IMG/VR virus record: IMGVR_UViG_3300044701_000569
Coordinates: 293,560-357,559 of that record
DNA length: 64,000 nucleotides
Reading direction: 5' to 3' (one strand)
The position numbers were made by a program, and so were the translations under genes. Each line of letters begins with the position of its first letter. Position 1 is the stretch's first letter. Positions 20,775 to 63,861 of this stretch are shown here, in pieces. The notes under the pieces were generated by a model that was not told the origin of the DNA, searched no databases, and saw only the letters and a program-made list of their open reading frames with translations.

Positions 20775-21121
20775 TTTTCCACCTTTGTATTTCGTTTATC
20801 TCTAAAGAGTTTAACATCCTTCATTGCACTTGTCAAGGCCGTAGCATAATTTAAAGCCTGTTGTTCACTCATGCAAATGGTGGTTTCGTGTTCCAAATAT
20901 CCTTTTGTAAGTAGATTCCAAAACTGTCGCCAGCGAGTTATACTCCAAAAAGGACTTTTCACTGTAACGTGTATGTTTACACTAACACCAGTGTCGTCAG
21001 CTTCTACCCAAAGATGATGTGTATGGTCAGGTTGTCCGCAGCCGCAAACAACATCATAAACTTTTGAGTCTCCCCAATCGTTTACTATTAAAATGCCTTC
21101 TGCTGGTTTTTGTATCTTCAT
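20771..21121 (-). CDS. hypothetical protein (CxC-H motif)
   Basis: VCGCGQPDHTH. Confidence 0.7.
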   Translation of the reverse strand: MKIQKPAEGILIVNDWGDSKVYDVVCGCGQPDHTHHLWVEADDTGVSVNIHVTVKSPFWSITRWRQFWNLLTKGYLEHETTICMSEQQALNYATALTSAMKDVKLFRDKRNTKVEK

Positions 21122-21849
21122 TGTGCTTTTGATTCTATACTGAGATCCTTGCTCTTTAGAGCAAACATATGGTCTCGTAGTTTTTCCATTAGCCCTTGAT
21201 TTCTCAACATTTTAAAAACTAGGTTTTCAACTGAAAACTCTCCGCCTGATTCTAGTCCAGCTTTTCTCATTCTCTTTAAGTCATCCCATTGTTGATTCAC
21301 TTCAACGAGACTGTCTGACTTAAGAACAGTTTTGATTTCGCCACTGTACTGTTTGTATTTTCTTTGTACATCCTGACTGTTAATGTCAACCTGTTCTTTC
21401 TTAGGTTCACTGACCCATTTATCTTTGAGAACACTGTAGATACCTAGACTGTGATGCTCTTGTGCTACATCCTGTACATAGACTTCAACGTCAATGCCTT
21501 TTACTTTGATATCATACTGTGTGTTGTATTGATTCTTCTTAGCATCAAATAATTCTGGAAACTCAGGCTCATTTTCTGGAACTTTAGCTACTATATGTAG
21601 ATCAATGTCACTGTATTTTGTATAGGAATAAGCAGCATTAGATCCGCTCACTGTTATATCAACTAACGATATCTTAACACCTATAAAATCTATAAAGTCT
21701 TTGATTACTTCCAGTAGACCCTTACGTATCGCTGGGTGCATTCTTCCACTGTTATCCCACAGTTTAGGATTTAGATCGTCGTGAAACACTACAGCTGAAT
21801 CCACGCTGACTTCATTTTTTTGCGATACGGTAAACTCTTTAATTAGCAT
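21118..21849 (-). CDS. Pol-beta superfamily nucleotidyltransferase
   Basis: SGSNA...SDIDLH...VEVYVQ; TAAATA 4 nt before the ATG. Confidence 0.85.
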   Translation of the reverse strand: MLIKEFTVSQKNEVSVDSAVVFHDDLNPKLWDNSGRMHPAIRKGLLEVIKDFIDFIGVKISLVDITVSGSNAAYSYTKYSDIDLHIVAKVPENEPEFPELFDAKKNQYNTQYDIKVKGIDVEVYVQDVAQEHHSLGIYSVLKDKWVSEPKKEQVDINSQDVQRKYKQYSGEIKTVLKSDSLVEVNQQWDDLKRMRKAGLESGGEFSVENLVFKMLRNQGLMEKLRDHMFALKSKDLSIESKAQ

Positions 21850-21871
21850 ACAGTATTTAGCGCATCAAAAA

Positions 21872-22090
21872 TCAATTCAGCATAGATCCGCCGCTAAACG
21901 GCTTAACATCGTCTCGGCTTTCAGAAATACGATCAATTATTGCTTCAAATCCCTCAGTATCTAAATAGGTTTTATACATGCTGAGAGCAATAACACTCAT
22001 AATAGCGGCTATTTCCATAGGATCGTAATCTTCTAACATTAGATCTGTAAATGTTAAAAATTTACGATACAATTCATCTTGATCATTCAA
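21872..22090 (-). CDS. hypothetical protein
   Basis: 72-aa ORF. Confidence 0.7.
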   Translation of the reverse strand: MNDQDELYRKFLTFTDLMLEDYDPMEIAAIMSVIALSMYKTYLDTEGFEAIIDRISESRDDVKPFSGGSMLN

Positions 22091-22562
22091 TGAAACGCTC
22101 CTTTAGTCTTTGTTGACGCTCAAGTTCATGTTCGTCGCAAAGTGTACGCATCCAACCGCCTGTGCGCCAGCTTCCAGGAGTTCCGCATTCCTCACAGGTT
22201 GTAGCAGCCATAGCTTCTGCCATACGTACCATGCCGTGAATCTGTTCATCGCCGCCACTGTAGTAAAAACGCAGACCGCCAAACTTTTCCTTAACCTGCA
22301 TAGCAACAACCTGCTCTACATGTGGTGTGCGAGGATAACCTGGCTCGCCTGTTTCTACACCCTTTTCAACTTCCCACTGTCTGCGCTTTTCAACCCAATC
22401 AATATGATGTTGAATACAGGCACAAAGATTGTTGATAATATTGTACCAACCTTCTCCACAACTAAAACCCCAGCACATGGCTGTTTCGTTCATTGGTGAG
22501 TTTCTGTCCCTAAAAATCTTAGGGTACTTTTCGCACAACTGTTTATCTAGTTCTTCTCTCAT
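22083..22562 (-). CDS. conserved phage protein with C-terminal Zn ribbon
   Basis: QVKEKFGGLRFY, CEECG...LCDEH. Confidence 0.8.
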   Translation of the reverse strand: MREELDKQLCEKYPKIFRDRNSPMNETAMCWGFSCGEGWYNIINNLCACIQHHIDWVEKRRQWEVEKGVETGEPGYPRTPHVEQVVAMQVKEKFGGLRFYYSGGDEQIHGMVRMAEAMAATTCEECGTPGSWRTGGWMRTLCDEHELERQQRLKERFIE

Positions 22563-22573
22563 AATACAACTCC

Positions 22574-28740: not shown

Positions 28741-28776
28741 AAAGTATTTATGAAGAAAAAGATTCTAAAAAGGTTT

Positions 28777-33692: not shown

Positions 33693-35333
33693 TTATTTGG
33701 AAGCAATGTATCCAGGAGTAGGAGTCTGCTGGTCATCATTCCAGTTAAATCCTGCACCCATTACTACTGTTTTACCTAGCTTTTTAACTAGGTCACTACC
33801 ATCTTTAATTATTGTATAATCAAGTGTGTCTGTTCTCAAGAACATGATAGTAGTTATACCATCTGCTAGATGATAGCTTTCATAGGCTATTCTTGCATAG
33901 ACCTTGTTCATTTTTTCTACGTCAACTGTGCCATCCTGATTAATTGCTGTAGCAATCAACTTGTCAGAGTTTTTAATCTTGTCAAGATTTAGCACAAGTG
34001 CCTTTATGGTGTTATAGAAAAGTTCATAAGTTTTATTGAAGTCACTAAATGGTTCAAGAATTTCTTCGTTTAGTGCTTGAAAACCTTTTGGATTCCAGTT
34101 GTACTTGTTGCCTAACTTAGCTTTGCCTTTTATTACGTTGTATTGATTACCATCAAATTTATTAAGAGGAACCTTGATTCGATTTCCCTTCTTATCAGTA
34201 CTATAAATTGTAGCGTTATCAGGAGCAGCTGATAAAATAGCATTAATGCCTTTTCTCCATGGTTCCCAACCAGCAGTAGCTTTTGCAATACTCTTACTGT
34301 TTAGTCGACCACCCGTTGACGCACTAGCTTTAATCTCAAGTTCAGTGTCGCCAACCTTGAGATCGCCTTTCTTTGCTTTCTCCGCAGGATTGCCCATCAT
34401 TGATAGTGCCATCTCTCCTGGTCCAATTGCTCCAGAAGTCTTACCAGGACTATAACTAAAAATGTTTTGTTCTACAAAGATGTCAAAAAGTTTCTTGTAC
34501 TTAGGATTAACATTGTCTTTGATGTTACCTCTGTCTGTACCTATCACAGACAACATATTGATAACATCGCCCTTAACACAAGCAGCTAAGAAATCTTTAA
34601 TTTCTTTAGGGTCTACGTCTGCTTCAGATTGAATGTCAACAATTTTACCAAATAGTGCCTGCTTTAAGGTTTTAGTAAATTCCGCTGCGTTAACAGCTCG
34701 TTTAGTTGCTAGTGTTCTTTCTTTAGAAGTCATTGCGCCGAGGTCTTCTTCTTGGTAGCCTTGAACTTTATTGCCAAGTGCTACTAGATAGCTACTAACT
34801 TCTCTTACAAAACTTTCAGCTTCTTTTTGTTTTCCAACAGCAATATCTTTTGCTGATTTAAGTTCCTCAACCTGTTTAGTCAACTGATCAAGATTCTTAC
34901 GCATAGGGGTAATAAATTGCTTCTTAACCTTTTCGTCAATATTTGAAGCTTCAATAGCTTTGATCTGATCCTTTAAAGTTGCAATAGTGCTTAGAATTGA
35001 AGAATCTACTTCTTCAGACTCTCTAATGCTCTCAACAGGTGCAGGTTGTGGTGTAGCTGGTTGTGGCTGTGCAGGTTTAGCAACAGGTGCAGGCTGCGGC
35101 GTAGCTGGTTGTGGTTTTTCTTGTTGTTGTATGTTTGCTTTAGACAAGAAAGCAGCAATACTATCTGACATCTGTTTAAGTTTATTTGCAACAGATGTTT
35201 TAACATTTTGTTTTTCTGGCGGTAGTTGTGAAAGTGCAGATCCAATTACATCAAGATCGTGAATTGCTTTTTGAGCTTCAAGGTCTGATTGCTCAACAGC
35301 TTCTTTAATAACTAATAACTCTCTAAATTTCAT
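33693..35333 (-). CDS. large protein with coiled-coil N-terminus and PD-(D/E)xK nuclease-like C-terminus
   Basis: GPGE...KGDL...LEIKAS; PQPA repeats; TAAATA upstream. Confidence 0.65.
   Translation of the reverse strand: MKFRELLVIKEAVEQSDLEAQKAIHDLDVIGSALSQLPPEKQNVKTSVANKLKQMSDSIAAFLSKANIQQQEKPQPATPQPAPVAKPAQPQPATPQPAPVESIRESEEVDSSILSTIATLKDQIKAIEASNIDEKVKKQFITPMRKNLDQLTKQVEELKSAKDIAVGKQKEAESFVREVSSYLVALGNKVQGYQEEDLGAMTSKERTLATKRAVNAAEFTKTLKQALFGKIVDIQSEADVDPKEIKDFLAACVKGDVINMLSVIGTDRGNIKDNVNPKYKKLFDIFVEQNIFSYSPGKTSGAIGPGEMALSMMGNPAEKAKKGDLKVGDTELEIKASASTGGRLNSKSIAKATAGWEPWRKGINAILSAAPDNATIYSTDKKGNRIKVPLNKFDGNQYNVIKGKAKLGNKYNWNPKGFQALNEEILEPFSDFNKTYELFYNTIKALVLNLDKIKNSDKLIATAINQDGTVDVEKMNKVYARIAYESYHLADGITTIMFLRTDTLDYTIIKDGSDLVKKLGKTVVMGAGFNWNDDQQTPTPGYIASK
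35033..35115 (-). repeat. intragenic duplication encoding PQPATPQPAPV twice
   Basis: Two near-identical caacaggtgcagg...gtagctggttgtgg units 48 nt apart. Confidence 0.8.
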
Positions 35334-53522: not shown

Positions 53523-53843
53523 TCAAAGCGATTTTAAGTCAACCGCATTCTTTGCCATATTACCTACAGTGTCTCCTGGCCTGCCAGGATTGCCAGGTAG
53601 GTTAGCAAGGTCGTCAGTTTCGCTTGATTTTAATTCTATATTGAGTTTGTCAAAGTTTGTGACTAGCTTCTGTAGTCTAGGATCTGCATCGTATGCAGCT
53701 TTGAAGAGATCATAGGTAAAGTTTCCTTTACCCATGTTCTGCATTAGTTTGTCTAGTTTTTCTATTGACAGTTTAAACTTGCCGCCATCTTTCAAATGCT
53801 TAAGAACTTGAAAGATTGTGTTTGCGTCAGTTGTTTCTGTTAC
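53523..53843 (-). CDS. hypothetical protein, probably made as a -1 frameshift extension of 53840..54580
   Basis: Frame open from the A9G run; no ATG/GTG or SD ahead of the TTG at 53795. Confidence 0.6.
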   Translation of the reverse strand, partial: VTETTDANTIFQVLKHLKDGGKFKLSIEKLDKLMQNMGKGNFTYDLFKAAYDADPRLQKLVTNFDKLNIELKSSETDDLANLPGNPGRPGDTVGNMAKNAVDLKSL

Positions 53844-54580
53844 TTTTTTTTTGAACCTGTGCGCTCTACGCTTTCACGTCTCGCACGGCCCATTTCTTCG
53901 TCACCACCAGCTGCTGGTTCAGCAGCATCAGTTGAAGGTGCAACTTCTTCTTCGTCACCTGCAGGTGCTAACTCGTCATCAACTGTAGGTTCCATTTCTG
54001 GTTCTGCGCCCATAGGCTCTACTGGTTCTGCTTCGCCTGTTAGCATGCCTACACCCTGTGTTAGTGTAGAACGTGTTGACTCCATTGCAGCATACATAGC
54101 TTCTAGTGCAGGCTTAACTGTTGATGTAAACTGTTCTGCTTGTGCAGAACCCATTTCATCACGAATAGCGTCGGCTAGTTCAAGCATAGACTCTGTCTGC
54201 ATTTCAGCAGTGTCTTCCATCCAACCAGTAACACGATCAACCATATCCTTAGCTGCCATTACTAGTTCGGCCTTGTCTTCTTCGCCTTCGTTTAGTCTGC
54301 TGATTGCTTCGTCAATTGCTTCTGCTACAGATCCGCGTTCTGATAGTGCAGCATTTAGAACATCTAGGAAGAGCTTGTTCTTTTGGTAATCTTCTTTCTG
54401 TACAGCGTCAAAACTTTCTGTAGTTTGTACCTGTGATAGCTTGGTGCGTATCTTATTGCGAACATCCTGAAGCTGTTCAGTTGTGAACTTGTCAAGATCA
54501 ATTCTAGCTCCAAAACGTTGAGCTAGGCTCTCGTTGAGCTTCTTTGCGGATACTGGTTTTGTAAATTCTCTAATGTTCAT
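53840..54580 (-). CDS. acidic coiled-coil protein, prohead core/scaffold-like
   Basis: MNIREF N-terminus, LNE/TES sites, Glu/Pro-rich tail; TAAATA upstream. Confidence 0.6.
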   Translation of the reverse strand: MNIREFTKPVSAKKLNESLAQRFGARIDLDKFTTEQLQDVRNKIRTKLSQVQTTESFDAVQKEDYQKNKLFLDVLNAALSERGSVAEAIDEAISRLNEGEEDKAELVMAAKDMVDRVTGWMEDTAEMQTESMLELADAIRDEMGSAQAEQFTSTVKPALEAMYAAMESTRSTLTQGVGMLTGEAEPVEPMGAEPEMEPTVDDELAPAGDEEEVAPSTDAAEPAAGGDEEMGRARRESVERTGSKKK

Positions 54581-54619
54581 TGTCTCTTCCCAAATGACTT
54601 GTATGTTTTATTTATGCGA

Positions 54620-55042
54620 TCAGAATATAAATTTATCTAAATCCTGTTTTAAGGCCTTGGATTTAGCTATGGAAATGTCTAACCTGTGTAGTCTAGATTC
54701 TACTACACTTATATCGTCTGTTCTACGGATACGGTTTCTATAGTAAAGAGCATCATTATAGTGCTTTAGTAGCTCTAGATCTACATTCATGATACGATCA
54801 ACGTGATTCCTACCCTCAGCTAGGCTTTTAGCCAGCGCAATAGCAGAGATCTTAAAATTAGTTACTCCAACTCGTGCGTTCTTAGCACAGTCATATACTT
54901 GGTAACCTTTAGAATTCTTACGGATAGCATAACTACCAATACGAATACTGTTACCTCGCTGATAGGGCATAATTATACTGGAGTTTTCAAGCCCAGTTTC
55001 AATTAGTTCCATAAGTTCATCTGCGACAGAGTCAAAGTTCAT
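54620..55042 (-). CDS. hypothetical protein
   Basis: 140-aa ORF. Confidence 0.75.
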   Translation of the reverse strand: MNFDSVADELMELIETGLENSSIIMPYQRGNSIRIGSYAIRKNSKGYQVYDCAKNARVGVTNFKISAIALAKSLAEGRNHVDRIMNVDLELLKHYNDALYYRNRIRRTDDISVVESRLHRLDISIAKSKALKQDLDKFIF

Positions 55043-55235
55043 TTTTCTTCACCATGATTTGATTGTTATAAACAATCTTAGTTATAAGACTTTTCCTAAC
55101 TAGATCGATAATAATGACTCGCTCTCTTTCGTTAAAGCTGGACAAGGGAGCAATGTCATTCATGTTCTCTAATATAGCACGTTCTTCGTTAGTTGTAAAG
55201 ACACTAAATCCCTTGATCAGCTCATTTATTTTCAT
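55032..55235 (-). CDS. hypothetical protein (MKINE N-terminus)
   Basis: 67-aa ORF. Confidence 0.7.
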   Translation of the reverse strand: MKINELIKGFSVFTTNEERAILENMNDIAPLSSFNERERVIIIDLVRKSLITKIVYNNQIMVKKNEL

Positions 55236-55474
55236 ATGTTCTTAACCATTACCTTGTCGCCAGGTTTGATACCTCTATCTACTGTTCCTTTGACCTGTGT
55301 GTCCAATGTTAGGTTGCCGCGGTCGTCTTTGGTTATAGCGCCGGGCTTGCTAGGATCTTTAGGCACTACGGTCTTGACCTGTGTCTTTGGATCTACAAGG
55401 ACTGTTTCCTTATCATCATCGCTCATGATTTGAAGGATTGGACTTTGTTCTAATACAATTTCATTTATTTTCAT
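55232..55474 (-). CDS. hypothetical protein (MKINE N-terminus)
   Basis: 80-aa ORF, AAGGA SD. Confidence 0.7.
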   Translation of the reverse strand: MKINEIVLEQSPILQIMSDDDKETVLVDPKTQVKTVVPKDPSKPGAITKDDRGNLTLDTQVKGTVDRGIKPGDKVMVKNI

Positions 55475-55569
55475 TTTTCTGTCCTTGAAAGACTCTATTT
55501 GAATTTTTCGACAGATGGTGAGTCCGTAAAAAAATCCACGTAATAATATAATATTATTTAGCGTGAATT

Positions 55570-55806
55570 TTAGAACTTCATTAATATTGTAACGACTGTG
55601 GTTAAGAGTCCAGCGACTATTGTTGTAGCTGCGCCAACTATAACTTTGACTAGGCTGTTTTGGCCCTGACGCATGTCTTCATGTATGGTAGATATCTTTT
55701 GTTCTACGCTGGTTAGTCTATCGTCTAGCTGCTGGTAGCGAAGTGCGCACAAGTCAACGTGTGCTTCTAAACTTTGCTTTTCTAAACTTGTGGGTGCAGA
55801 TGACAT
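55570..55806 (-). CDS. coiled-coil plus C-terminal TM protein (XhlA/holin-like)
   Basis: SLEAHVDLCALRY, coiled coil, hydrophobic C-terminus. Confidence 0.65.
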   Translation of the reverse strand: MSSAPTSLEKQSLEAHVDLCALRYQQLDDRLTSVEQKISTIHEDMRQGQNSLVKVIVGAATTIVAGLLTTVVTILMKF

Positions 55807-55876
55807 CTACTTTAATCTCCGTAATAACACAAAAAAGGTTAGTGTGCCTAGAAAATAGATGCCTGAGTGGATTTGT

Positions 55877-56272
55877 TTAACTGATAGTATTTAGTTCAAA
55901 CACTATATTTTTTGTCTGTTTGTTCTTGCTATCAAATACACAATCTTTTAGTTTAATAGTTTCTTGTAGTCCGTTTATTATAGGAACTAAATGAAAATCA
56001 CTGTCCAGCATTTCAACTGTAAGACCACCTTCGTACTCAACATTAAACTCCCCACTCCATACAGTGTGTTCGCCCTTGTAACTTGATCCAAACCTAAAAT
56101 CTTTTACACTAACAGTTTCTGTTTTTAGATTTTCTAAATCAATGTTTACCCGCAGTGTGAGCGTTTGTAGAAATGTTAGATAGTTCTGTTGCTGATGCCA
56201 AACAGGATCAGATTTGTTAAAACGTGCATCCGTTTTGGTTATATCAACTAGGGTATAGAACTTAAATCTCAT
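55877..56272 (-). CDS. hypothetical late protein
   Basis: TLVDITKT...QQQNY; TAAATA 5 nt before the ATG. Confidence 0.75.
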   Translation of the reverse strand: MRFKFYTLVDITKTDARFNKSDPVWHQQQNYLTFLQTLTLRVNIDLENLKTETVSVKDFRFGSSYKGEHTVWSGEFNVEYEGGLTVEMLDSDFHLVPIINGLQETIKLKDCVFDSKNKQTKNIVFELNTIS

Positions 56273-56290
56273 GTAGTTATTTACAGAGAT

Positions 56291-56320
56291 AAAAAAAACG
56301 CCACTATAAAAGTGGCGTTT
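56291..56320 (-). terminator. intrinsic terminator
   Basis: AAACGCCAC-ttttata-GTGGCG-T8 on the minus strand. Confidence 0.8.
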
Positions 56321-56348
56321 CCCTTCCCATCCCTAGGAATATTAGCTA

Positions 56349-56720
56349 TTAAGCTAGTGTGATGCTTGAAGCTTCTGCAACAGTTGTGTCGTTAGCTGCT
56401 ACTGCTGTACCTAGTCCTAGTGCTACTACTAGGTGACGTAGACGAACCTGTAGGCTTGCTGCACTCTGAGCATGACCGTCCATAATCACGTGGATTGTGC
56501 CGCTGTTGTCATTGGTTACGAAAACCATCTGTCCGCCAATTTCACGTAGGATTAGGTCTAGTTCTGAACCGTATGCTGCGTCATAGCTGCGTAGGTCAAT
56601 AGCTGTGTTGCTGTCGTCCTTGATTGTGATCAAGAAAGCCTTGAGCTGAACTGTGCTGTAAATTGTACCAGCTGAAGGTACTGTATTAGCTTTTGGTGTA
56701 AAATCAAAAGTCGCTGCCAT
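56349..56720 (-). CDS. small putative virion structural protein
   Basis: Strong TAAGGAG SD, TAAATA promoter, own terminator, Ala/Thr-rich. Confidence 0.65.
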   Translation of the reverse strand: MAATFDFTPKANTVPSAGTIYSTVQLKAFLITIKDDSNTAIDLRSYDAAYGSELDLILREIGGQMVFVTNDNSGTIHVIMDGHAQSAASLQVRLRHLVVALGLGTAVAANDTTVAEASSITLA

Positions 56721-56809
56721 TTTATATCTCCTTAAATGTCTCTAATGGCAAACTCACTACTCTGTGAGCTTGATATAATTATTTAGTCAAACGGAGAAAA
56801 ATTGGGTTG

Positions 56810-57754
56810 TTATTGCTTATTTTTGGCTCTTTTGTGAAGAGCTCTTAGATTCTGTATATAACCAGGGCCAGCCTGTACTATATCGTCTATCATGTCAATA
56901 ATAGGCATATAAGCTTCTACGTAGGCTGCAGGTATAGTTCTACCTTCTATTGCACTAATTAAAAACTGTCTAGTTAACATGAGTTTATCAGCGCCTACAA
57001 GATATCTATACATTGCGATATCTTTATTAATAATGCTTATATCTGGTTTGCTTACTGTAGGTTCAGGATCAGTAGCAAACTCTTTCTCCATGTTGTTGTT
57101 TGCAGCCCAGTGTTCAAAATCTGTAATGATATCCGAACTGCGTAGTTTTGCTCTAACAGCAAATATTAATCGTGTAGCAACAACTCGCTTGTCCTGTCGT
57201 GTAATATGCTGCCAGTTACCAAGCTCTCTACGTATTTCTTTATAGTCTTTATTTGTTATTCTAAGTATAGTTTCAAGTTTAATGAACAATGCAGTTGGCA
57301 GTGTTGGCTCTTTTCCCTGTGCTAGATCTCTAATGTATCTATTGAGATCTAGCATAGGTATTTTAGTTTTCTTTTTAAGAGCTATAGCAGCATCAGGGTC
57401 TTTTAGTTTTTCTTGAGCACTATCGCTGCCTACTAAGAAATAGATAAAATTGTAGAGGTCGGTACCCATAATACGATAGAACTTGTACAGTTCAAAACCT
57501 GCTGTTTTCTTTGCGTAGTCTCTTACTGTGGCTGCATAAGAAGGATAGCGGCGTAGTGTTTCTAATACCAACAGCATTAGGTATAGTCGTTCACAGCAAT
57601 CTGAATAGGTCAGTTTCTGTGAACTACCGTCGTCTTTGGTCATCCTTGACTCAAAGATATCTTGTAGGAAAGAAAATGGTTTATCTTTGGAAGGTGTAAT
57701 TTCGTGACCCCCTTCCATCAATGCCCACTCTAGTGCTGTGTATCGCTTTTCCAT
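56810..57754 (-). CDS. hypothetical late protein
   Basis: 314 aa; ALMEGGH motif. Confidence 0.75.
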   Translation of the reverse strand: MEKRYTALEWALMEGGHEITPSKDKPFSFLQDIFESRMTKDDGSSQKLTYSDCCERLYLMLLVLETLRRYPSYAATVRDYAKKTAGFELYKFYRIMGTDLYNFIYFLVGSDSAQEKLKDPDAAIALKKKTKIPMLDLNRYIRDLAQGKEPTLPTALFIKLETILRITNKDYKEIRRELGNWQHITRQDKRVVATRLIFAVRAKLRSSDIITDFEHWAANNNMEKEFATDPEPTVSKPDISIINKDIAMYRYLVGADKLMLTRQFLISAIEGRTIPAAYVEAYMPIIDMIDDIVQAGPGYIQNLRALHKRAKNKQ

Positions 57755-57758
57755 TTAA

Positions 57759-58247
57759 TTACTTTGCGTTGTTCTCAATCCAAGTCATTACATCATAGAG
57801 ATCGTTTACAAGTTGATTAGGACCAACTGGTTCACCTTGTCCTAGTTCTGCTTGCTTGCTCTGCTTGCGAATAGCTGCTAAAACATTAATAGCATCGTCA
57901 GCGGTCTTGATGTAGGCTTCACGAATTGTGCTTTCCTGCTCAACAGGATCTTTAGCTTTACGCACAGGACCTGCACTCTTTAATTGTGCCTGCGCCATGC
58001 CCATTAACTTTTGTATTGCCTTTGGATCTAAGCCAGTGCGCTTAACAACATCCATTAGACTATTAGGACCAAATGGTGTACCAAATTCTGTCATTGCACT
58101 GCCTAAGCTGGCCATTTGATTTGATTCAACATCATCTTTGTGACTTGCTGCCATGTCCATTAGAGTGCGACCTAGCTCTGCTAGTTTTGCTTGCTGCGGA
58201 TCAATGCTAGTTTTTTGCATCTCAACCATTACATCTTTAATTTTCAT
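57759..58247 (-). CDS. hypothetical late protein
   Basis: 162 aa; MKIKDV N-terminus. Confidence 0.75.
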   Translation of the reverse strand: MKIKDVMVEMQKTSIDPQQAKLAELGRTLMDMAASHKDDVESNQMASLGSAMTEFGTPFGPNSLMDVVKRTGLDPKAIQKLMGMAQAQLKSAGPVRKAKDPVEQESTIREAYIKTADDAINVLAAIRKQSKQAELGQGEPVGPNQLVNDLYDVMTWIENNAK

Positions 58248-58259
58248 TTTATGTTTCCT

Positions 58260-59354
58260 TTAGTTTGGTGTCCAACGATGACGTGGAACTAATTTTGTTT
58301 TAGAGCCTAGAGCCATATAGCCTTCGCCACCTTGCTCTCCGCCTGTTGATGCTTTTACATCCGCATCAGCTGCATCCAACTGATCAATTAGATCGTTTTT
58401 TACGCTCATAATCTTATTTACTAATTCAAATACAGCAGGCAGTGCGTTAGGATTAGCTTTGTTTAGCTCTGCTATCTTTGCCTGCTTGCCTGCGCTTACT
58501 GTTGATGCCTGTAACCAATTAAAGAATCCATCAGCAGATAAATTGTCTAACTGTTTTGCCTTTGCTGTTTGATTCACAAAGGTATAGATAATGTTCTTCA
58601 TGTCACTCAGCCCTGCCACGGGTGCTAGGAATTGATCAATAGCTTTACCATTCTTAGCTGCTAAAGATCTAATCTCTTTTACGTGGCTGGTGTCAACCTT
58701 AGGCGTGTGAGTTACATAGGTTTGTCCTAGTACTACTGCTTCTGGACTGTTTAGTTCAGCAATGTTCTCAATTGGAGTTCCGTTCTTGCTGCCAAACTCA
58801 TCATACTTCATGTGTACAACCACACCAACCTTGGCTCTTGCTGAACGCTTGCCTAGGTCACTGCTTGGGTCAACTGTATAGGTTACCTTGTTAGGAGTAA
58901 ATTGAATACCTTCTTTGGTAGACTGAAATGGTTTGCCTGGATGCCACAGTAGGTCTCCGTAGACATATCCTCTAAAGTCTGGTGGTGTACTCTTTTCCAT
59001 GATAGTGAAGATGCCGGCCATGTCATTACCAAACTTTTCTCTCCAGTCTTCGCCTTTGCCAGAGCTTTTAATAAAGTTAGCCAGGTCTTCTGGGTTTGTG
59101 CTTTTGTTTCTTCCCCAGCCATTCTTGCCAACAAGAACAAACTTGCCGTCTTCTTCTCTACCCCAATACACAGTAGGATTACCGTCCCACTTGATACTAA
59201 CATCACTGGTGTCTTTGCCTAGCTTGTCTAATACATCTGCTGCTTCGTTAGCACCTGCGGCACCATCAACAAAAACTAAATCTTCAAGGTGCTGATAGTC
59301 TCTACCAACCTTGGCAGCTTCTGTTAACAATGTTTTAAATTCTTGAAATCTCAT
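58260..59354 (-). CDS. KxDG ligase/nucleotidyltransferase-like protein (DUF6267-like)
   Basis: HLEDL, IKWDGNP, YGDLL, FTPN, GEGY, KLVPR. Confidence 0.7.
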   Translation of the reverse strand: MRFQEFKTLLTEAAKVGRDYQHLEDLVFVDGAAGANEAADVLDKLGKDTSDVSIKWDGNPTVYWGREEDGKFVLVGKNGWGRNKSTNPEDLANFIKSSGKGEDWREKFGNDMAGIFTIMEKSTPPDFRGYVYGDLLWHPGKPFQSTKEGIQFTPNKVTYTVDPSSDLGKRSARAKVGVVVHMKYDEFGSKNGTPIENIAELNSPEAVVLGQTYVTHTPKVDTSHVKEIRSLAAKNGKAIDQFLAPVAGLSDMKNIIYTFVNQTAKAKQLDNLSADGFFNWLQASTVSAGKQAKIAELNKANPNALPAVFELVNKIMSVKNDLIDQLDAADADVKASTGGEQGGEGYMALGSKTKLVPRHRWTPN

Positions 59355-60133
59355 CTGTTGAATGCTCCAGAACTCATAGAGCTGTGATTGAGCAGAGCAC
59401 CACTTAGTTCTCTAATACGATTTAGGTGCTTGTCAGCTAGTGTTTCTTTCTGTGGATACTCTTTCCAAGCAGGATCTGCTTTTAGGTCTGCTAGGAACTG
59501 CTGTCCTCTAGTGCCTAATGCTGCAACAATAGATTCTACTGATCCTAGATCCTTTGCGCCTGCGTTTGGTCCTATCAGTGTCTTAGCTATTTCATCTAAG
59601 TCTGTTGATACTATACTATCATCAGCTCTGTTTAGCAAGCCTTTAAACGCACTCCACTTCATATCTTTTTCTTTAGCAAGTTTAGCCATTGCTAACTGTT
59701 TGTTTAATCCCTTATAGGGACTGCCTTTGGGTATATCATGAATGTGAAACTTGCTTACCACTTCACTGTTTGGCACCAGCATTAAATCCACCTGGTGTGA
59801 CTGATCACCTACAGGAACTTTAACGTGTACATTGATACCAATTACCTTAGTTTCAAAGCCTGCTTTCTTAAAGAGATCTTCAAGTGCTTTCTTAGTTGGC
59901 AGTGGCTTGTCTGTGCCCAGTGCTGCCATTACGGCATCTTGGTCTACAATTACATCCAAGTCGCCGCTCTTTTTACCTGGTGTAGGGGTTGCGCCTGAAC
60001 CAATTGGAAAGCCTTTAATCTTGATGTTATCAAGTACTGAATTAATAGACTTTGTTAGTTGAGGAATAACAGCATGATCAAAATCGCTGGTTCCATCAAA
60101 TACATTGCCACCTTCTTTAAGAATTGCCTTCAT
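59351..60133 (-). CDS. Pol-beta superfamily nucleotidyltransferase-like protein
   Basis: IGSG...SGDLDVIVD...QVDLM; EGGNVF near the N-terminus. Confidence 0.75.
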   Translation of the reverse strand: MKAILKEGGNVFDGTSDFDHAVIPQLTKSINSVLDNIKIKGFPIGSGATPTPGKKSGDLDVIVDQDAVMAALGTDKPLPTKKALEDLFKKAGFETKVIGINVHVKVPVGDQSHQVDLMLVPNSEVVSKFHIHDIPKGSPYKGLNKQLAMAKLAKEKDMKWSAFKGLLNRADDSIVSTDLDEIAKTLIGPNAGAKDLGSVESIVAALGTRGQQFLADLKADPAWKEYPQKETLADKHLNRIRELSGALLNHSSMSSGAFNR

Positions 60134-60386
60134 TTCTTTCCTTAGATTCAATTATTTTAGTTATAGCTCTGCGAAACTTACGTGGATCTCCGCTTTTAAT
60201 TGAATTTAAAAAGCGACGCTCAAGCTCTGAAGCAGTTTCTACATCATATGTTGAATGTATTCTGCTCAGTAAATTAATGGAACTTTCAATAATGTTGTTG
60301 GCTGTGGTATCGATAAAACGATCCGCATCACGCTTTCCATAAACACTGTTCAGCTCTTCTAATATACTTCTAGTACGTTTTCTCAT
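60117..60386 (-). CDS. hypothetical late protein
   Basis: MRKRTRSILEEL; SD and TAAATA upstream. Confidence 0.75.
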   Translation of the reverse strand: MRKRTRSILEELNSVYGKRDADRFIDTTANNIIESSINLLSRIHSTYDVETASELERRFLNSIKSGDPRKFRRAITKIIESKERNEGNS

Positions 60387-60531
60387 TGCACTTTCCTATA
60401 TTATTATTTAGTGTAATATAAAGAGATTAAATCTTTTTAGTAAATCCTTGACTTTTATCATGGTTTACACTATATACTAAATACGTAGCTGATGTTATCA
60501 GCAACACAACACACACATATAGAGGAAAAAC

Positions 60532-61573: not shown

Positions 61574-61612
61574 GCCCCTGGAGTAGCAGTACTTCAGGGG
61601 TTAATCTTTTTT
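61574..61612. terminator. terminator between convergent genes
   Basis: gcccctggagta-gcag-tacttcaggggt followed by a T-run. Confidence 0.7.
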
Positions 61613-63170
61613 AGAATATTAAAGCGTAGACGAAAAGATCATCTTGACTTATATTAGAAGCTAGGCGATTGTTTATATCTGTGAGATCACTAATATCTAC
61701 TGGAATAGTTGGCTTGTTTGTTAAGTCTGCGTAACTGCCAGAAAACAGTGTAGGCGTATCGCTAAGGTCGTTGTAACTTGTAACTAGTGTTGGTTTATTA
61801 GTTAGGTCTTCGTAGCTTCCTGAAAACAATGTTGGAAGTCCAGTTAAGTCGTCATAGCTGCCGCTGAACAATGTAGGAAGATCTGTTAAATCATTATAGC
61901 TGACAGTTGTTAAGTAACCTTGAGTTGTTACATAAGTTTCAGTAGCATATCCTGTTAGAGCAGAAATAGTAATAAATCCTGCGTTATTTGTTAAATCTCC
62001 GGTGTCCGAAGGTATTGTTGGTTTATTAGTTAGATCGTTGTAACTGCCGCTGAACAGAGTTGGTTTACCGCTCAACTGGTCATAAGTGATGTTAGGAATA
62101 TCTCTGCCATCAAAATTCAATCGTTTGCCTGTGCCAATGTTTGTCCAGTATTGAGTATTGCTTGTTGGCAAACTTTCGTTATCAAAGTTTGCAACATATA
62201 TGCTGCCATTATCATACACAGCATCCCCTGCAAGATAGCGTGTATTTTCTCCGCCAGGTAACAGTGTATGATTAGCGGTCCATTGCGGGGCAACTGCTAA
62301 CGAAGTTGGTTTATCAGTTAAGTCATTATAGCTGCCGCTGAACAGTGAAGGTAGGTCAGTCAACTGATTATAGCTAGTAACTCCTCCTGAAACTGTTACA
62401 CTTACAATTCCATCAGCATCAATTGTTAGACCAGAACCTATTTTAATTCCGCCCAGTATGCTGTTGGATGCTTTTGGTAAGCTATATCCTGCACCACTGG
62501 AAGAAAGAACATTGTTGTTATCACTAAGTTGGCTGATGTCAGTTGGTATAGTGGGTTTATCAGTCAGTTGAGTGTAACTTGTAATTAGGGTAGGTTTATT
62601 AGTTAGATCGTTGTAGCTTCCGCTGAATCCGTCTACAGTACCATCTGCATTTTTTGTTAGGCCTCGACCAATTTTAATTCCGCCTTTTACAGATCCACTA
62701 GCTTCCGGAACGTCAGTGATAAAACCTCTACCGTTTACAAATGATTCAGTAGCATATCCGGTTAATGCTGTATTTGTAATAAAACCAGCACTGTTTGTAA
62801 GCTGGCTGGTATTTGTTGGTACAGTTGGTTTATTTGTTAAGTCGTCGTAGTTGCCGCTGAATAGGGTTGGCTTGTTTGTTAAATCTGCGTAACTGCCGCT
62901 AAATCCGCTTATAACCTGATTGTTAATTCTAATAGTAGTGCCATCAACTTTAACACCACCTTTGGTTGTTGCCGATGCAGTGGGTAGTGTATAAGTTACT
63001 CCACCGCCTCCATCAGTGCCGCCTGTTGATAACGGAACACCACCAGGAGTTTCACCGTCAGACAGTCTTAGTACGCCGTCTGAAATATCAAAGAAAAGGT
63101 TTCCAACTTCGCCTACGAAAACGTCAATATCAGCATTGACCAAACCGGCTTTAATTTTACGAAACGCCAT
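61611..63170 (-). CDS. repeat-rich virion fibre protein
   Basis: About 13 (LF)SGSYxDLTxKPT repeats, three PxAS...GG(V/I)K repeats, internal W..RYLAGDAVYDNG.IY (CBM5/12-like). Confidence 0.8.
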   Translation of the reverse strand: MAFRKIKAGLVNADIDVFVGEVGNLFFDISDGVLRLSDGETPGGVPLSTGGTDGGGGVTYTLPTASATTKGGVKVDGTTIRINNQVISGFSGSYADLTNKPTLFSGNYDDLTNKPTVPTNTSQLTNSAGFITNTALTGYATESFVNGRGFITDVPEASGSVKGGIKIGRGLTKNADGTVDGFSGSYNDLTNKPTLITSYTQLTDKPTIPTDISQLSDNNNVLSSSGAGYSLPKASNSILGGIKIGSGLTIDADGIVSVTVSGGVTSYNQLTDLPSLFSGSYNDLTDKPTSLAVAPQWTANHTLLPGGENTRYLAGDAVYDNGSIYVANFDNESLPTSNTQYWTNIGTGKRLNFDGRDIPNITYDQLSGKPTLFSGSYNDLTNKPTIPSDTGDLTNNAGFITISALTGYATETYVTTQGYLTTVSYNDLTDLPTLFSGSYDDLTGLPTLFSGSYEDLTNKPTLVTSYNDLSDTPTLFSGSYADLTNKPTIPVDISDLTDINNRLASNISQDDLFVYALIF

Positions 63171-63199
63171 CCCTTAGCCCCCTATACGATATTTATCGG

Positions 63200-63424
63200 T
63201 TACTGTTTAGGAATTGGTTTCTCGTCTTGTGTTAGTTTTTGTATTACAGGACTGATTTTGCCTTGATCAGCTTTCTTTAATTCAATGTCTTGCTGAAGTG
63301 GAGGAACAAACACTGGATTCTGATCAAAGTCTTTTGGATCTTTTGGTGGCAGTTCGTTAGAAGACTCGCCGTCTAGCTTGTCAATAATATCGGCCAAAGC
63401 CCTCATAAATTCTGCTGCTCTCAT
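63200..63424 (-). CDS. hypothetical late protein
   Basis: MRAAEF, FVPPLQQ; TAAATA 5 nt before the ATG. Confidence 0.75.
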   Translation of the reverse strand: MRAAEFMRALADIIDKLDGESSNELPPKDPKDFDQNPVFVPPLQQDIELKKADQGKISPVIQKLTQDEKPIPKQ

Positions 63425-63438
63425 ACTATTATTTACCG

Positions 63439-63861
63439 TTATTCTGTTCTGTCTTTGTTATCTATGGCTCCGCCTGTTACCCAGGCACTACAAGAACGTG
63501 TTCCAGCGCATTTGAAATGGAGGAAATTGCAGTATCCTAAATCTGCTTTGTGTATTGTAGCCATTCCGTCAACATTTGCGTCATCACCTTTGATGCCGTC
63601 TTCCATGCACTTCCACATCTTGTCTGATACATCAAAAGCTGCACAATTACCACATTTCATAGTCTTAGCAGTCTTTTCTGTGATGTTCCAACGACGGGCA
63701 GCATCCTTCCAATATGATTCTGGCTCTTCAGGATTAGCAGGACCGTAGTGATAATCATCTATGGCCTTTTGACGATTCTTTAAGTTAACATCTATGTCGT
63801 AGGTTGCTATAGGACAGCCCTTGTTAGCTGCTTCTACAATGTTGATATACTTGCGATACAT
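63439..63861 (-). CDS. Cys-rich protein (possible Fe-S/Zn binding)
   Basis: CGNC..F, GYC, FKC..RSC.AW; GGAG SD before ATG 63861. Confidence 0.75.
   Translation of the reverse strand: MYRKYINIVEAANKGCPIATYDIDVNLKNRQKAIDDYHYGPANPEEPESYWKDAARRWNITEKTAKTMKCGNCAAFDVSDKMWKCMEDGIKGDDANVDGMATIHKADLGYCNFLHFKCAGTRSCSAWVTGGAIDNKDRTE

What the first reader, a model, noticed from the sequence alone, without database searches (positions are those of the whole stretch)
21118..63861. Capsid-targeting-like N-termini mark a set of probably packaged and injected proteins
Seen: MLIKEF (21849), MKFRELLVIKEA (35333), MNIREF (54580), MKINEL (55235), MKINEIVLEQ (55474), MKIKDVMVEM (58247), MRFQEFKTLLTEA (59354), MKAILKEGG (60133), MRAAEF (63424), MYRKYINIVEA (63861), nearly all under TAAATA promoters. 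Known: T4 internal proteins carry the capsid-targeting sequence MKTYQEFIAE, removed by the prohead protease after (I/L)xE. Inference: these proteins, including two nucleotidyltransferases, a ligase-like protein and a nuclease, travel in the head and act at the moment of infection.
Basis: partly seen in the sequence, partly recalled or inferred. Interest (0 to 1): 0.65.

Follow-up and report, generated by a model that had tools for sequence, protein, structure and literature searches.

The report
Head-targeting tags on jumbo-phage proteins
Seven of the ten listed proteins of this uncultivated 358-kb RaK2/PA5oct-like jumbo phage carry a conserved, detachable N-terminal tag that closely resembles the phage T4 capsid-targeting sequence, so they are probably loaded into the phage head; packaging, cleavage and injection are inferred, not shown.

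Summary
All ten N-termini are in the sequence as written.

A stricter, anchored motif is real. M-[KR]-[ILF]-x-[ED]-[ILF] is usually followed 2-15 residues later by [LIV]-x-E|[A/S/G].
- It is about 3-fold enriched at position 1 and is the top of 60 arrangements in two genomes.
- It is conserved in orthologues from about 150 IMG/VR loci, with synonymous codon turnover.
- It sits on at least 21 unrelated protein families.
- It is gained and lost among orthologues and is absent from cyanophage homologues.

Seven of the ten fit: 21849, 35333, 54580, 55235, 55474, 58247 and 59354. Three do not: 60133, 63424 and 63861.

The phage has a T4-type prohead protease. In the cultured relative PA5oct, tagged proteins are enriched among mass-spectrometry-detected virion proteins (7/89 against 5/394, p=0.002). 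Window 53.8-60.4 kb is syntenic with a PA5oct virion-protein cluster. Tagged genes lie in late units (11 of 245 genes) and never in early units (0 of 114).

Cargo includes a pol-beta nucleotidyltransferase and a ligase-like protein. The PolX-like enzyme has only an LxE site. No nuclease was found among the ten.

Verdict: a new variant of the T4 capsid-targeting system. Packaging and injection are inferred.

The parts
21118..21849 (-). 243-aa pol-beta-type nucleotidyltransferase with tag MLIKEF (matrix score 9.5). Leaderless late start.
   Evidence: PF01909, E 6e-5. TAAATA box at 21854-21859 with a 4-nt spacer. Orthologues at 45-54% identity keep M-x-L-x-E-[FL]; a subset is about 8 aa shorter, lacks the tag and has a stop codon just upstream.
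33693..35333 (-). 546-aa protein of unknown function. Tag MKFREL, then VIKE|A at residues 8-12.
   Evidence: TATAAATA box at 35357-35362, 23 nt upstream. Orthologues show MR[FY]xD[FI]K, a variable linker, then [LIV]xE[AST]AN. Score 10.5.
53840..54580 (-). 246-aa homologue of PA5oct virion protein gp237. Tag MNIREF, then KLNE|S at residues 14-18.
   Evidence: phrog_14154 'virion structural protein'. BLASTP to PA5oct gp237 (ESI-MS/MS positive), E 1e-8. CATAAATA box at 54609-54614. Both elements are conserved in 30 loci. Score 13.1.
55032..55235 (-). 67-aa protein with tag MKINEL. Its start overlaps the stop of the upstream gene (ATGA).
   Evidence: Orthologues in 31 loci keep MK[ILV]NE[LI]. Score 13.9.
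55232..55474 (-). 80-aa protein with tag MKINEIVLE.
   Evidence: Five orthologues keep MK[IM]x[ED][IL]; four of the five have [IL]xE at residues 7-9. Best score in the genome, 15.9.
57759..58247 (-). 162-aa protein with tag MKIKDVMVE.
   Evidence: It shares only its first 9 residues with PA5oct virion protein gp238, MKIKDILVE. Among orthologues the tag (MKIxE[IV]TE|A) is present in some and absent in others, which have a stop codon just upstream. Score 8.9.
58260..59354 (-). 364-aa ligase-like protein (DUF6267). It has an N-terminal extension of about 18 aa: MRFQEF-KTL-LTE|A.
   Evidence: PF19782, E 3e-26. K55-x-D57-G58 is invariant. AF2 pLDDT 83.7, with residues 1-19 below 50. The best fold matches are RNA/DNA ligase nucleotidyltransferase domains, Z 5-5.9. 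80 orthologues keep MR[FY]xEF and LTE[AE], with a linker of variable length and sometimes a duplicated LTE. Cyanophage homologues lack the extension.
59351..60133 (-). 260-aa PolX-like nucleotidyltransferase. It has no MKIxEI tag; its N-terminus is MKAILKE|GGN.
   Evidence: Foldseek to DNA polymerase lambda/PolX, E 2e-6, prob 1.0. GS...SGDLD signature; L5, E7, G8 and G9 are invariant even at 28% identity. Residues 1-7 have pLDDT below 50. Matrix score -8.8.
63200..63424 (-). 74-aa protein starting MRAAEF. Leaderless late start. Tag status unresolved.
   Evidence: GGTAAATA box at 63430-63435 with a 5-nt spacer. Score -1.0. The only match in the fetched loci was one locus from a contig of the same sample (L015).
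63439..63861 (-). 140-aa protein of unknown function starting MYRKYINIVE|A. It does not fit the main tag but resembles the T4 CTS in length and in I8-x-E10|A11.
   Evidence: Five distinct orthologous N-termini, in 7 loci; four keep ..Y..I[IV]E|AAN.GCP. Score -6.4. The protein-atlas search returns only viral hypothetical clusters.
60405..60410 (-). TAAATA late-promoter-like box. It heads the unit 60386 -> 60117 (PA5oct gp225-like), 60133, 59354, 58247 and onward.
   Evidence: The region contains no better-than-chance sigma-70-like sites: 33 found against 28.6 expected.
54620..57754 (-). Six untagged late genes interleaved with the tagged ones. Part of the block syntenic with PA5oct gp226-gp239.
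   Evidence: 54620-55042 matches PA5oct gp236 (E 0.002) and 56349-56720 matches gp233 weakly. Orthologue N-termini show no tag. Leaderless box at 56278-56283 and a further box at 56780-56785.

Best explanation
The window comes from a 357.6-kb RaK2/GAP32/PA5oct-like jumbo myovirus with a T4-type head-assembly module. Many of its late proteins carry a short, flexible N-terminal propeptide made of two elements.
- Element (i) is an anchored M-[K/R]-[I/L/F]-x-[E/D]-[I/L/F]. Its hydrophobic residues, spaced i and i+3 around an acidic residue, are the same arrangement as Y4-Q-E-F7 of the T4 CTS.
- Element (ii) follows 2-15 residues later: [L/I/V]-x-E followed by A, S or G. This is the T4 gp21-type cleavage motif.

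Most likely mechanism, inferred by analogy with T4: element (i) docks the protein to the scaffolding core while the prohead assembles. The S77 prohead protease then cuts after the Glu of element (ii), or after E5 where no second site exists. The mature protein stays in the head with the DNA and leaves with it at infection.

In this window the tag is carried by seven proteins:
- a pol-beta-type nucleotidyltransferase (21118-21849);
- a 546-aa protein (33693-35333);
- a homologue of PA5oct virion protein gp237 (53840-54580);
- two small proteins (55032-55235 and 55232-55474);
- a 162-aa protein (57759-58247);
- a ligase-like DUF6267 protein (58260-59354).

Shown here: the tag is real, conserved at the protein level, modular, associated with late units and enriched in a relative's virion proteome.

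Inferred: binding to the core, cleavage, residence in the head rather than elsewhere in the virion, and injection.
For: Head machinery:
- Peptidase_S77 (8.5e-27), a Gp23-type capsid protein, a portal and a scaffold lie at genome 109-116 kb.
- The capsid protein is 65-70% identical to those of Phosso, PA5oct, CBB and GAP32.

The tag is non-random:
- 19 genes against about 6 expected; top of 60 arrangements in two genomes.
- 13 N-termini against 1.35 expected with the position matrix.

Protein-level conservation:
- Orthologues at 45-70% identity keep both elements while the linker length varies.
- Conserved positions use synonymous codons freely: E5 GAA:GAG 13:11, F6 TTT:TTC 12:12, and several Leu codons (five at position 3 of one family, six at position 6 of another).

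Modularity:
- At least 21 unrelated families carry the tag, and family frequencies are bimodal: 43 of 64 families have none.
- Tagless orthologues of two families have a stop codon 1-4 codons upstream.
- Cyanophage DUF6267 and HxGH-nucleotidyltransferase homologues start without it.
- Window 57759-58247 and PA5oct gp238 share only residues 1-9.
- The extension is disordered: pLDDT is below 50 for residues 1-19 of the ligase-like protein.

Link to the virion:
- In PA5oct, GenBank flags 93 virion proteins detected by ESI-MS/MS. The simple motif occurs in 9/89 flagged against 10/394 unflagged genes (p=0.003). The matrix, trained without PA5oct, gives 7/89 against 5/394 (p=0.002).
- The small gene after the portal carries the simple motif in both phages and is MS-positive in PA5oct.
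- Window 53840-60386 is collinear with PA5oct gp225-gp240, where 12 of the 14 genes gp226-gp239 are virion proteins.

Timing: 11 of 245 late-unit genes score >=6 against 0 of 114 early-unit genes, p=0.014.

T4 comparison:
- ipII and ipIII begin MKTYQEFIAE|A, and gp23 has FLTE|A.
- In T4, targeting depends on residues 4 and 7, processing on residues 8 and 10, and the propeptides are 10-19 residues long (PMC9026906).
Against: There is no direct proteomic or N-terminal data for this phage or for any tagged protein.
- The PA5oct data say 'in the virion preparation'. They do not say 'in the head' or 'cleaved'. That proteome also contains RNR, ThyA and ClpP, so it includes some contaminants or unexpected cargo.
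- Only about 8% of PA5oct virion proteins carry the tag, and 5 tagged PA5oct genes are MS-negative. Paralogues (gp380/381) reduce the independence of the counts.
- With the simple motif, the late-versus-early contrast is not significant (13/245 against 3/114, p=0.2).
- The syntenic cluster of CBB has virion proteins but no tag, so the tag is not general in the RaK2-like group.
- The nucleotidyltransferase at 21118-21849 and the two small proteins have no clean second cleavage site.
- The capsid protein's predicted LAE|S site aligns to T4 gp23 residue 77, 12 residues downstream of the FLTE cleavage Glu (residue 65), so it is not positionally equivalent.
- The protease-plus-tag complex prediction gave no answer.
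Confidence: 0.6

Rival explanations
1. The tag directs proteins into the virion or an assembly intermediate, but not into the DNA-filled head interior. It could be a docking peptide for tail, baseplate or fibre assembly, or for a chaperone. In that case the proteins are structural or assembly factors and not injected cargo.
For: PA5oct mass spectrometry only shows association with particles. Several tagged proteins are small and of unknown function. RaK2-like virions have elaborate tail appendages (PMC5259590). One tagged window protein is homologous to a generic 'virion structural protein' family.
Against: The tag reproduces the T4 CTS determinants and a gp21-type site. The same tag sits on the small gene inside the head module, directly after the portal. 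Cargo such as a ligase-like enzyme and nucleotidyltransferases are not plausible tail parts. Recognised tail, sheath, baseplate and fibre proteins in both phages lack the tag.
Confidence: 0.15
2. The motif is a feature of translation initiation or of the mRNA. A/T-rich early codons would help late genes with weak or no Shine-Dalgarno sequence; it would not be a protein signal.
For: Typical tag codons (AAA, ATT, AAT, GAA) are A/T-rich. Two tagged genes are leaderless and several have weak ribosome-binding sites.
Against: Conserved positions show free synonymous turnover, including G/C-ending and CGT/CTG codons, while the residue class is kept. The residue order matters: shifted or permuted patterns with the same composition are 2-6 times rarer. 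The other 27 ORF-opening leaderless late genes and the abundant structural proteins lack the motif. A second conserved element lies at variable distance.
Confidence: 0.04
3. The tag is a degradation or regulatory signal read by a protease system other than the prohead protease. Candidates are the phage's own ClpP, ClpS-like and ClpX-like proteins, or an N-degron exposed after cleavage. It would set protein lifetime and not location.
For: The phage encodes ClpP (window 1915-2412) and a ClpS-like protein (36600-36911), both homologous to PA5oct genes. Cutting after E5 would expose F, L or I.
Against: This would not explain the enrichment in purified particles. It would also not explain the tag on the head-module gene or the match to the T4 CTS determinants. 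Most families have a second site that would leave Ala, Ser or Gly as the new N-terminus.
Confidence: 0.06
4. Chance resemblance plus shared ancestry of a few paralogues; there is no common function. This is most relevant to 60133, 63424 and 63861.
For: The loose (I/L)xE criterion is near chance. These three do not fit the matrix. In 60133 the conserved L-x-E-G-G-N may simply be part of the enzyme core, since it is invariant at 28% identity.
Against: For the seven core members, see the enrichment, conservation, modularity and proteome results. Four of the five distinct orthologues of 63861 keep I-[IV]-E|A-A-N.
Confidence: 0.05

Closest known systems
Capsid targeting sequence (CTS) of phage T4 internal proteins IPI, IPII and IPIII (and Alt), removed by prohead protease gp21
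   Same: - An N-terminal propeptide of about 10-19 residues on otherwise unrelated late proteins.
- Two hydrophobic residues spaced i and i+3 around a Glu: T4 Y4-Q-E-F7, here [ILF]3-x-[ED]-[ILF]6.
- A following [IL]-x-E|A processing site: T4 I8-A-E10|A, here for example LTE|A, IKE|A and ITE|A.
- A T4-type S77 protease and Gp23-type capsid protein in the same genome.
- Cargo genes sit in variable clusters flanked by conserved genes.
Sources.
   Different: - The register is one residue shorter, and position 2-3 is K/R-I/L where T4 has K-T.
- The linker between the two elements varies from 0 to about 15 residues and can be duplicated.
- The repertoire is much larger: at least 14 genes in this genome and at least 21 families in relatives, against a handful in T4.
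- Recognisable enzymes dominate the identifiable cargo: ligase-like, pol-beta nucleotidyltransferase and HxGH nucleotidyltransferase. T4 cargo is small basic anti-restriction proteins.
- Targeting and cleavage are untested here.
Propeptide-bearing ejection and internal head proteins of phiKZ-like giant phages (phiKZ, 201phi2-1, SPN3US), processed by their prohead protease
   Same: Jumbo phages that load many proteins, some of them enzymes, into the head and process them after Glu during maturation (PMC5694885, PMC7411985, PMC10052503; abstracts).
   Different: That lineage is different, with a reported A/S/G-x-E-type motif (from my own knowledge) and long propeptides. No short anchored N-terminal tag equivalent to the one here has been described there. 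This phage belongs to the RaK2-like, T4-core group.
Virion proteome of Pseudomonas phage PA5oct (93 particle-associated proteins, 73 of unknown role)
   Same: It is the nearest cultured relative with proteomics. Its gp150, gp205, gp230, gp238, gp380 and gp381 carry the same tag and are MS-positive. The gp226-gp239 cluster is syntenic with window 53.8-60.4 kb.
   Different: In a search of the PA5oct paper for cleav, propeptide, prohead and internal, no passage mentions an N-terminal motif, propeptides or head-versus-tail assignment for these proteins (PMC7318152). Apart from gp237 and gp225, the proteins themselves are not detectably homologous to those in the window.

Membership tests
T4-type capsid targeting sequence (CTS) / internal-protein propeptide | A short (10-19 aa) propeptide at the extreme N-terminus, outside the folded domain | tested here: met
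   In the ligase-like protein, residues 1-19 have pLDDT below 50 and the fold starts at about residue 20. Cyanophage homologues start at the position equivalent to about residue 19. Tagless orthologues are about 8 aa shorter.
T4-type capsid targeting sequence (CTS) / internal-protein propeptide | Targeting determinants: two hydrophobic residues three positions apart (T4 residues 4 and 7) flanking Glu | tested here: met
   Family-weighted frequencies are: position 3 I/L/F 86%, position 5 E/D 86%, position 6 I/L/F 91%. The T4 sequence was read from NC_000866. The determinants are from PMC9026906. The register is shifted by one residue.
T4-type capsid targeting sequence (CTS) / internal-protein propeptide | A gp21-type processing site, (L/I)-x-E followed by a small residue, at the end of the propeptide | tested here: inconclusive
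   A site is present and conserved in 33693-35333, 53840-54580 and 58260-59354, and in many orthologues of 57759-58247. It is also present in 63439-63861 and 59351-60133. In 12 of 21 tag families no separate site is found after residue 5, only the I/L-x-E inside the motif itself. Actual cleavage was not observed.
T4-type capsid targeting sequence (CTS) / internal-protein propeptide | The same tag on proteins with unrelated mature parts | tested here: met
   At least 21 families were defined by BLAST clustering. Window 57759-58247 and PA5oct gp238 share only residues 1-9.
T4-type capsid targeting sequence (CTS) / internal-protein propeptide | Co-occurrence with a T4-type prohead protease (Peptidase S77), a scaffold core and a Gp23-type capsid protein | tested here: met
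   PF03420, 8.5e-27; PF07068, 4.7e-83; phrog_207 head maturation protease.
T4-type capsid targeting sequence (CTS) / internal-protein propeptide | Expression when proheads assemble (late promoters) | tested here: met
   11 of 13 matrix hits lie in units headed by a TAAATA box, 0 lie in sigma-70-like early units and 2 are unassigned; p=0.014. With the simple motif the contrast is only p=0.2. No transcript data were used.
T4-type capsid targeting sequence (CTS) / internal-protein propeptide | The protein is physically inside the mature head and has lost the propeptide | not testable with these tools
   Only indirect evidence exists: tag enrichment in the PA5oct particle proteome and synteny with its virion-protein cluster.
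T4-type capsid targeting sequence (CTS) / internal-protein propeptide | The tag alone is sufficient to encapsidate a foreign protein | not testable with these tools
   This needs a tag-reporter fusion in a cultured relative such as PA5oct.
ATP-dependent ligase / covalent nucleotidyltransferase superfamily (for 58260-59354) | Motif I K-x-D-G with a nucleotidyltransferase-domain fold | tested here: inconclusive
   K55, D57 and G58 are invariant in 19 orthologues. The top fold matches are RNA/DNA ligase adenylyltransferase domains beginning at K55, but only at Z 5-5.9 and Foldseek E about 0.2. There are no sequence hits to PDB.
Pol-beta / PolX nucleotidyltransferase superfamily (for 59351-60133 and 21118-21849) | G[GS]...D-x-D signature and palm fold | tested here: met
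   59351-60133: GS...SGDLD with invariant D58 and D60; Foldseek to Pol lambda, E 2e-6, prob 1.0. 21118-21849: PF01909 above its cut-off.

The most novel reading that the evidence does not exclude
The tag could act as a sequence-readable cargo manifest for an uncultivated jumbo-phage clade.

On this reading, the phage loads about 14 different proteins into its head. They include a ligase-like enzyme encoded next to a PolX-like polymerase, plus a pol-beta-type and an HxGH-type nucleotidyltransferase. It injects them with the DNA as a ready-made nucleic-acid repair or modification kit.

Cargo status would be switched on and off in evolution simply by gaining or losing an 8-18-residue N-terminal cassette, as seen among orthologues.

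A more speculative extension: where the only cleavage site is I/L-x-E5, processing would expose F, L or I as the new N-terminus. That would make the injected enzyme a short-lived N-degron substrate.
Probability: 0.3. Interest if true: 0.75.

Novelty: new variant of a known kind. Interest (0 to 1): 0.6.

Why it matters
If the tag works as in T4, injected or packaged proteins of RaK2/PA5oct-like jumbo phages could be predicted from sequence alone. That includes the many relatives known only from metagenomes.

It would help to explain the PA5oct particle proteins of unknown role: 73 of the 93 are unassigned, and six of the seven that score on the matrix are annotated only as 'structural protein'.

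It would point to an unusual enzymatic cargo: a ligase-like protein and nucleotidyltransferases. That suggests genome repair or modification, or counter-defence, at the moment of entry.

It would also provide a short cassette for loading foreign proteins into large-capacity capsids, as the T4 CTS does.

Tag gain and loss among orthologues offers a natural experiment on how phages recruit new cargo.

None of the full-text searches run here found a description of such a tag in this phage group.

Tried and rejected
- Near-identity DNA search of 20 kb against GenBank phages: no match.
- tblastn of 53840-54580: one weak hit only. tblastn of the DUF6267 protein: cyanophages only, no RaK2-like phage. 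Direct mapping of most window proteins to published proteomes therefore failed, and synteny was used instead.
- The PA5oct supplementary proteome table is not held. The GenBank 'ESI-MS/MS' notes were used instead.
- The CBB syntenic cluster shows no tag.
- Late-versus-early contrast with the simple motif: p=0.14-0.2, not significant. It becomes significant only with the position matrix.
- A Mann-Whitney test of matrix scores across all PA5oct genes shows no overall shift (p=0.64). The signal is confined to the upper tail, as expected for a tag carried by few proteins.
- Pfam, NCBIfam and PDB sequence searches give nothing for most candidates. The protein-atlas search for 63439-63861 returns only viral hypothetical clusters, so 'nuclease' could not be confirmed for any of the ten.
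- Complex prediction of the S77 protease with residues 1-40 of the ligase-like protein returned no answer, score 0.00. This is not evidence either way.
- Foldseek of the ligase-like model against PDB: no match at E <= 0.001. The wider aligner gave only Z 5-5.9.
- Not used: the read-mapping tools, the two large protein searches, and any non-standard genetic code.

Full report
WHAT THE WINDOW IS

The window is bases 293,560-357,559 of a 357,559-bp IMG/VR phage record. The genome is 39% G+C and most genes lie on the minus strand.

It has a T4-type head module. A Peptidase_S77 prohead protease lies at genome 111,645-112,268 (PF03420, 8.5e-27). A Gp23-type major capsid protein lies at 109,350-110,525. 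A portal, a scaffold-like protein and a small gene after the portal are adjacent.

The capsid protein is 65-70% identical to those of Sinorhizobium phage Phosso, Vibrio phage 2.275.O, Pseudomonas phage PA5oct, Pectobacterium phage CBB and Cronobacter phage GAP32. The phage is therefore an uncultivated member of the RaK2-like jumbo myoviruses. No near-identical cultured phage exists in the collection.

CHECK OF THE OBSERVATION

All ten peptides are at the stated coordinates.

ATAAATA is the most enriched 7-mer upstream of genes, at 19-fold. This agrees with the late-promoter motif reported for CBB and GAP32 (PMC5259590).

A by-product helped to fix start codons. TAAATA followed by exactly 4 or 5 nt and then ATG occurs 30 times in the genome, and 29 of these open ORFs of at least 49 aa. 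Spacers of 3 and 6 nt open none, and a 7-nt spacer opens one ORF in four. This indicates leaderless late mRNAs, and it validates the starts at 21849 and 63424.

Only four of the ten have a TAAATA box directly upstream. Five more lie inside units whose nearest upstream promoter-like site is such a box.

The anchored pattern M-x-[FILVMA]-x-[ED]-[FILVM] is not chance. It occurs in 19 of 458 genes against about 6 expected, and in 3-10 genes when shifted by 1-8 residues. It is the commonest of all 60 orderings of the same elements, both in this genome and, independently, in PA5oct.

COMPARATIVE EVIDENCE THAT THE TAG IS A FUNCTIONAL PROTEIN ELEMENT

Three scans of IMG/VR returned 158 related loci.

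Orthologues of the ligase-like protein (58260-59354) are 60-95% identical. All that start at the equivalent position read MR[FY]xEF[KR], then a linker of variable length, then LTE[A/E], sometimes duplicated.

The same two-part architecture is seen in other families:
- 33693-35333: MR[FY]xD[FI]K ... [LIV]xE[AST]AN.
- 53840-54580: M[NQ]IREF ... KLNE|S.
- 55032-55235: MK[IL]NELI.
- 55232-55474: tag conserved in five orthologues.
- 21118-21849: M-x-L-x-E-[FL].

Conserved positions use synonymous codons freely (E5 GAA/GAG 13:11, F6 TTT/TTC 12:12, several Leu codons: five at position 3 of one family, six at position 6 of another). Selection therefore acts on the peptide and not on the mRNA.

Clustering 1,280 unique proteins from these loci gives 64 families with at least four members. 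The tag frequency is bimodal: 43 families have none, and about 16-21 have it in most members.

The family-weighted consensus is M-[K57 R21]-[I50 L25 F11]-x-[E62 D24]-[I38 L32 F21]-x-[E/G]-[E/A]. Many families read MKIxEITE|A.

THE TAG IS MODULAR

- Some orthologues of 21118-21849 and of 57759-58247 lack the tag and have a stop codon 1-4 codons upstream of their ATG.
- Cyanophage homologues of the DUF6267 protein start directly at the conserved HLE(H)LED segment. Their neighbouring HxGH 'cytidyltransferase' also starts untagged. Relatives of this phage carry tagged versions of both.
- Window 57759-58247 and PA5oct gp238 share residues 1-9 and nothing else.
- In the AlphaFold model of the ligase-like protein (pLDDT 83.7), residues 1-19 are below 50 and the fold begins at about residue 20.

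LINK TO THE VIRION

PA5oct is the nearest cultured relative with proteomics. Its GenBank record marks 93 particle-associated proteins with 'ESI-MS/MS' (PMC7318152). I rebuilt the record and compared N-termini.
- The simple motif occurs in 9 of 89 matched MS-positive genes against 10 of 394 others (p=0.003).
- A position matrix trained only on the environmental families gives 12 PA5oct hits (1.4 expected). Seven of these are MS-positive: 7/89 against 5/394, p=0.002; for proteins of at least 70 aa, 7/89 against 3/273, p=0.003.
- The small gene directly after the portal carries the simple motif in both phages (MILREL here, matrix score 3.0; MKINDI in PA5oct gp150, score 14.2) and is MS-positive in PA5oct.

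Window 53,840-60,386 is collinear with PA5oct gp225-gp240. It is anchored by homologues of gp225, gp236, gp237 and the gp240 exonuclease, and further on by RNR and the baseplate-hub lysozyme. In PA5oct, 12 of the 14 genes gp226-gp239 are virion proteins.

In this genome the matrix finds 13 tagged genes (1.35 expected), plus 55032-55235, which my gene caller had missed. Eleven lie in late units, none in early units and two are unassigned (p=0.014).

A second tagged cluster lies at genome 223-226 kb and includes a tagged HxGH nucleotidyltransferase-like protein.

COMPARISON WITH T4

T4 ipII and ipIII, read from NC_000866, begin MKTYQEFIAE|A, and gp23 contains FLTE|A.

According to PMC9026906:
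- IP propeptides are 10-19 residues long.
- The first 10 residues suffice for targeting.
- Targeting depends mainly on residues 4 and 7.
- Processing depends on residues 8 and 10.
- The review suggests the CTS may be a general way for T4-like phages to load diverse proteins.

The tag found here has the same logic one residue earlier: hydrophobic residues at 3 and 6 around Glu5, then [LIV]-x-E followed by a small residue.

The capsid protein of this phage has a candidate site YLAE|SATAGATSAG. A 57-aa tagged ORF elsewhere in the genome reads MRLRELIE|TASAGATSAG, copying that junction. This fits the Glu being a protease site. However, the capsid site aligns to T4 gp23 residue 77, 12 residues downstream of the FLTE cleavage Glu (residue 65), so its assignment remains a prediction.

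THE TEN CANDIDATES ONE BY ONE

Tag supported (matrix scores 7.8-15.9): 21849, 35333, 54580, 55235, 55474, 58247 and 59354.

Not fitting the tag:
- 60133 has an invariant L-x-E|G-G-N even at 28% identity. Residues 1-7 are disordered in its model, so it could be a bare cleavage site or part of the enzyme core.
- 63861 reads M..Y..I-[IV]-E|A-A-N, a form kept in four of its five distinct orthologues. It resembles the T4 CTS in length and in I8/E10.
- 63424 matched only one fetched locus, from a contig of the same sample, and scores -1.0.

Functions:
- 21118-21849 is a pol-beta-type nucleotidyltransferase (PF01909).
- 59351-60133 is PolX-like (Foldseek to Pol lambda, E 2e-6; GS...SGDLD signature).
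- 58260-59354 is ligase-like (DUF6267; invariant KxDG; weak ligase fold matches, Z 5-5.9).
- No nuclease is recognisable among the ten.

MECHANISM, RIVALS AND LIMITS

The most likely reading (0.6) is a capsid-targeting propeptide removed by the S77 protease, with the mature proteins kept in the head.

- That they are injected and act immediately is a further inference from T4.
- A virion-incorporation signal for a site other than the head interior cannot be excluded (0.15).
- An mRNA or translation explanation is largely refuted.
- A Clp or N-degron role is speculative.
- Chance remains plausible only for the three non-fitting members.

Weak points:
- There is no proteome for this phage.
- PA5oct particle data do not localise proteins and include some metabolic enzymes.
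- Paralogues inflate the counts.
- CBB's syntenic cluster lacks the tag.
- The complex prediction gave no answer.

NOVELTY

Full-text searches returned only T4, P1, P22 and phiKZ-like (SPN3US) work, plus papers that merely cite the T4 CTS. The searches covered the capsid targeting sequence in jumbo or RaK2-like phages, and cleavage in RaK2/GAP32. Nothing was found on this phage group.

The finding is best described as a new variant of a known kind. It is a T4-style CTS system in a distant jumbo lineage, with its own consensus, a much larger and partly enzymatic cargo set, and visible gain and loss of the tag.

Noticed in passing
genome-wide; window examples 21849-21859, 28740-28750, 56272-56283, 63424-63435: Leaderless late genes. 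TAAATA followed by exactly 4-5 nt and then ATG occurs at 30 sites, and 29 of them open ORFs of 49-681 aa. Spacers of 3 and 6 nt open none and a 7-nt spacer one in four. PA5oct shows the same arrangement, for example gp140. One full-text search with leaderless, late-promoter, bacteriophage and TATAAATA terms listed nothing on RaK2-like phages by title or abstract.
   Followed up: partly
window 26695-33617 (minus strand): Six consecutive late genes (681, 557, 360, 224, 302 and 151 aa) all begin with signal-peptide-like or lipoprotein-like N-termini, for example MKKLFVNPLWAFVTLFVLLA and ...LSGCAS. This looks like a block of secreted or envelope proteins directly downstream of the tagged 546-aa gene.
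   Followed up: no
genome 223235-223408 (outside the window); also L012:10938-11096 (CBB_293): A 57-aa tagged ORF, MRLRELIE|TASAGATSAGSVAAV, copies the predicted cleavage junction and mature N-terminus of the major capsid protein (YLAE|SATAGATSAGNVATL). CBB_293 and an IMG/VR family carry the same A-T-S-A-G stretch. Its function is unknown; it might be a decoy, a competitor or a capsid-arm mimic.
   Followed up: partly
window 58260-60133: A PolX-like nucleotidyltransferase and an ATP-ligase-like DUF6267 protein are encoded side by side with overlapping stop and start codons (ATGA). This is a minimal gap-filling and sealing pair. T4-like cyanophages keep the ligase-like gene next to an HxGH 'cytidyltransferase'.
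   Followed up: partly
genome 223235-226203 (outside the window): A second cluster of tagged late genes: 57 aa MRLRELIE..., 362 aa MKSKDVLPE..., 363 aa MRLRQIFEAEGK... (with FGRMN, as in the HxGH-type FGRMNPPTxGH families) and 110 aa MRIEEFSKIE....
   Followed up: no
window 50716-50752: The ribonucleotide reductase large-subunit gene (48374-50716) has an AATAAATA late-type box 30 nt upstream. Its PA5oct homologue is among the particle-associated proteins. Either RNR is expressed late, or the box is not sufficient to define late genes.
   Followed up: no
window 1915-2412, 6957-9942, 36600-36911: The window also encodes ClpP, a ClpS-like adaptor homologue and an rIIA homologue, plus a homologue of the PA5oct gene annotated 'protector from prophage-induced early lysis' (the rIIB function). 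All are shared with PA5oct.
   Followed up: no
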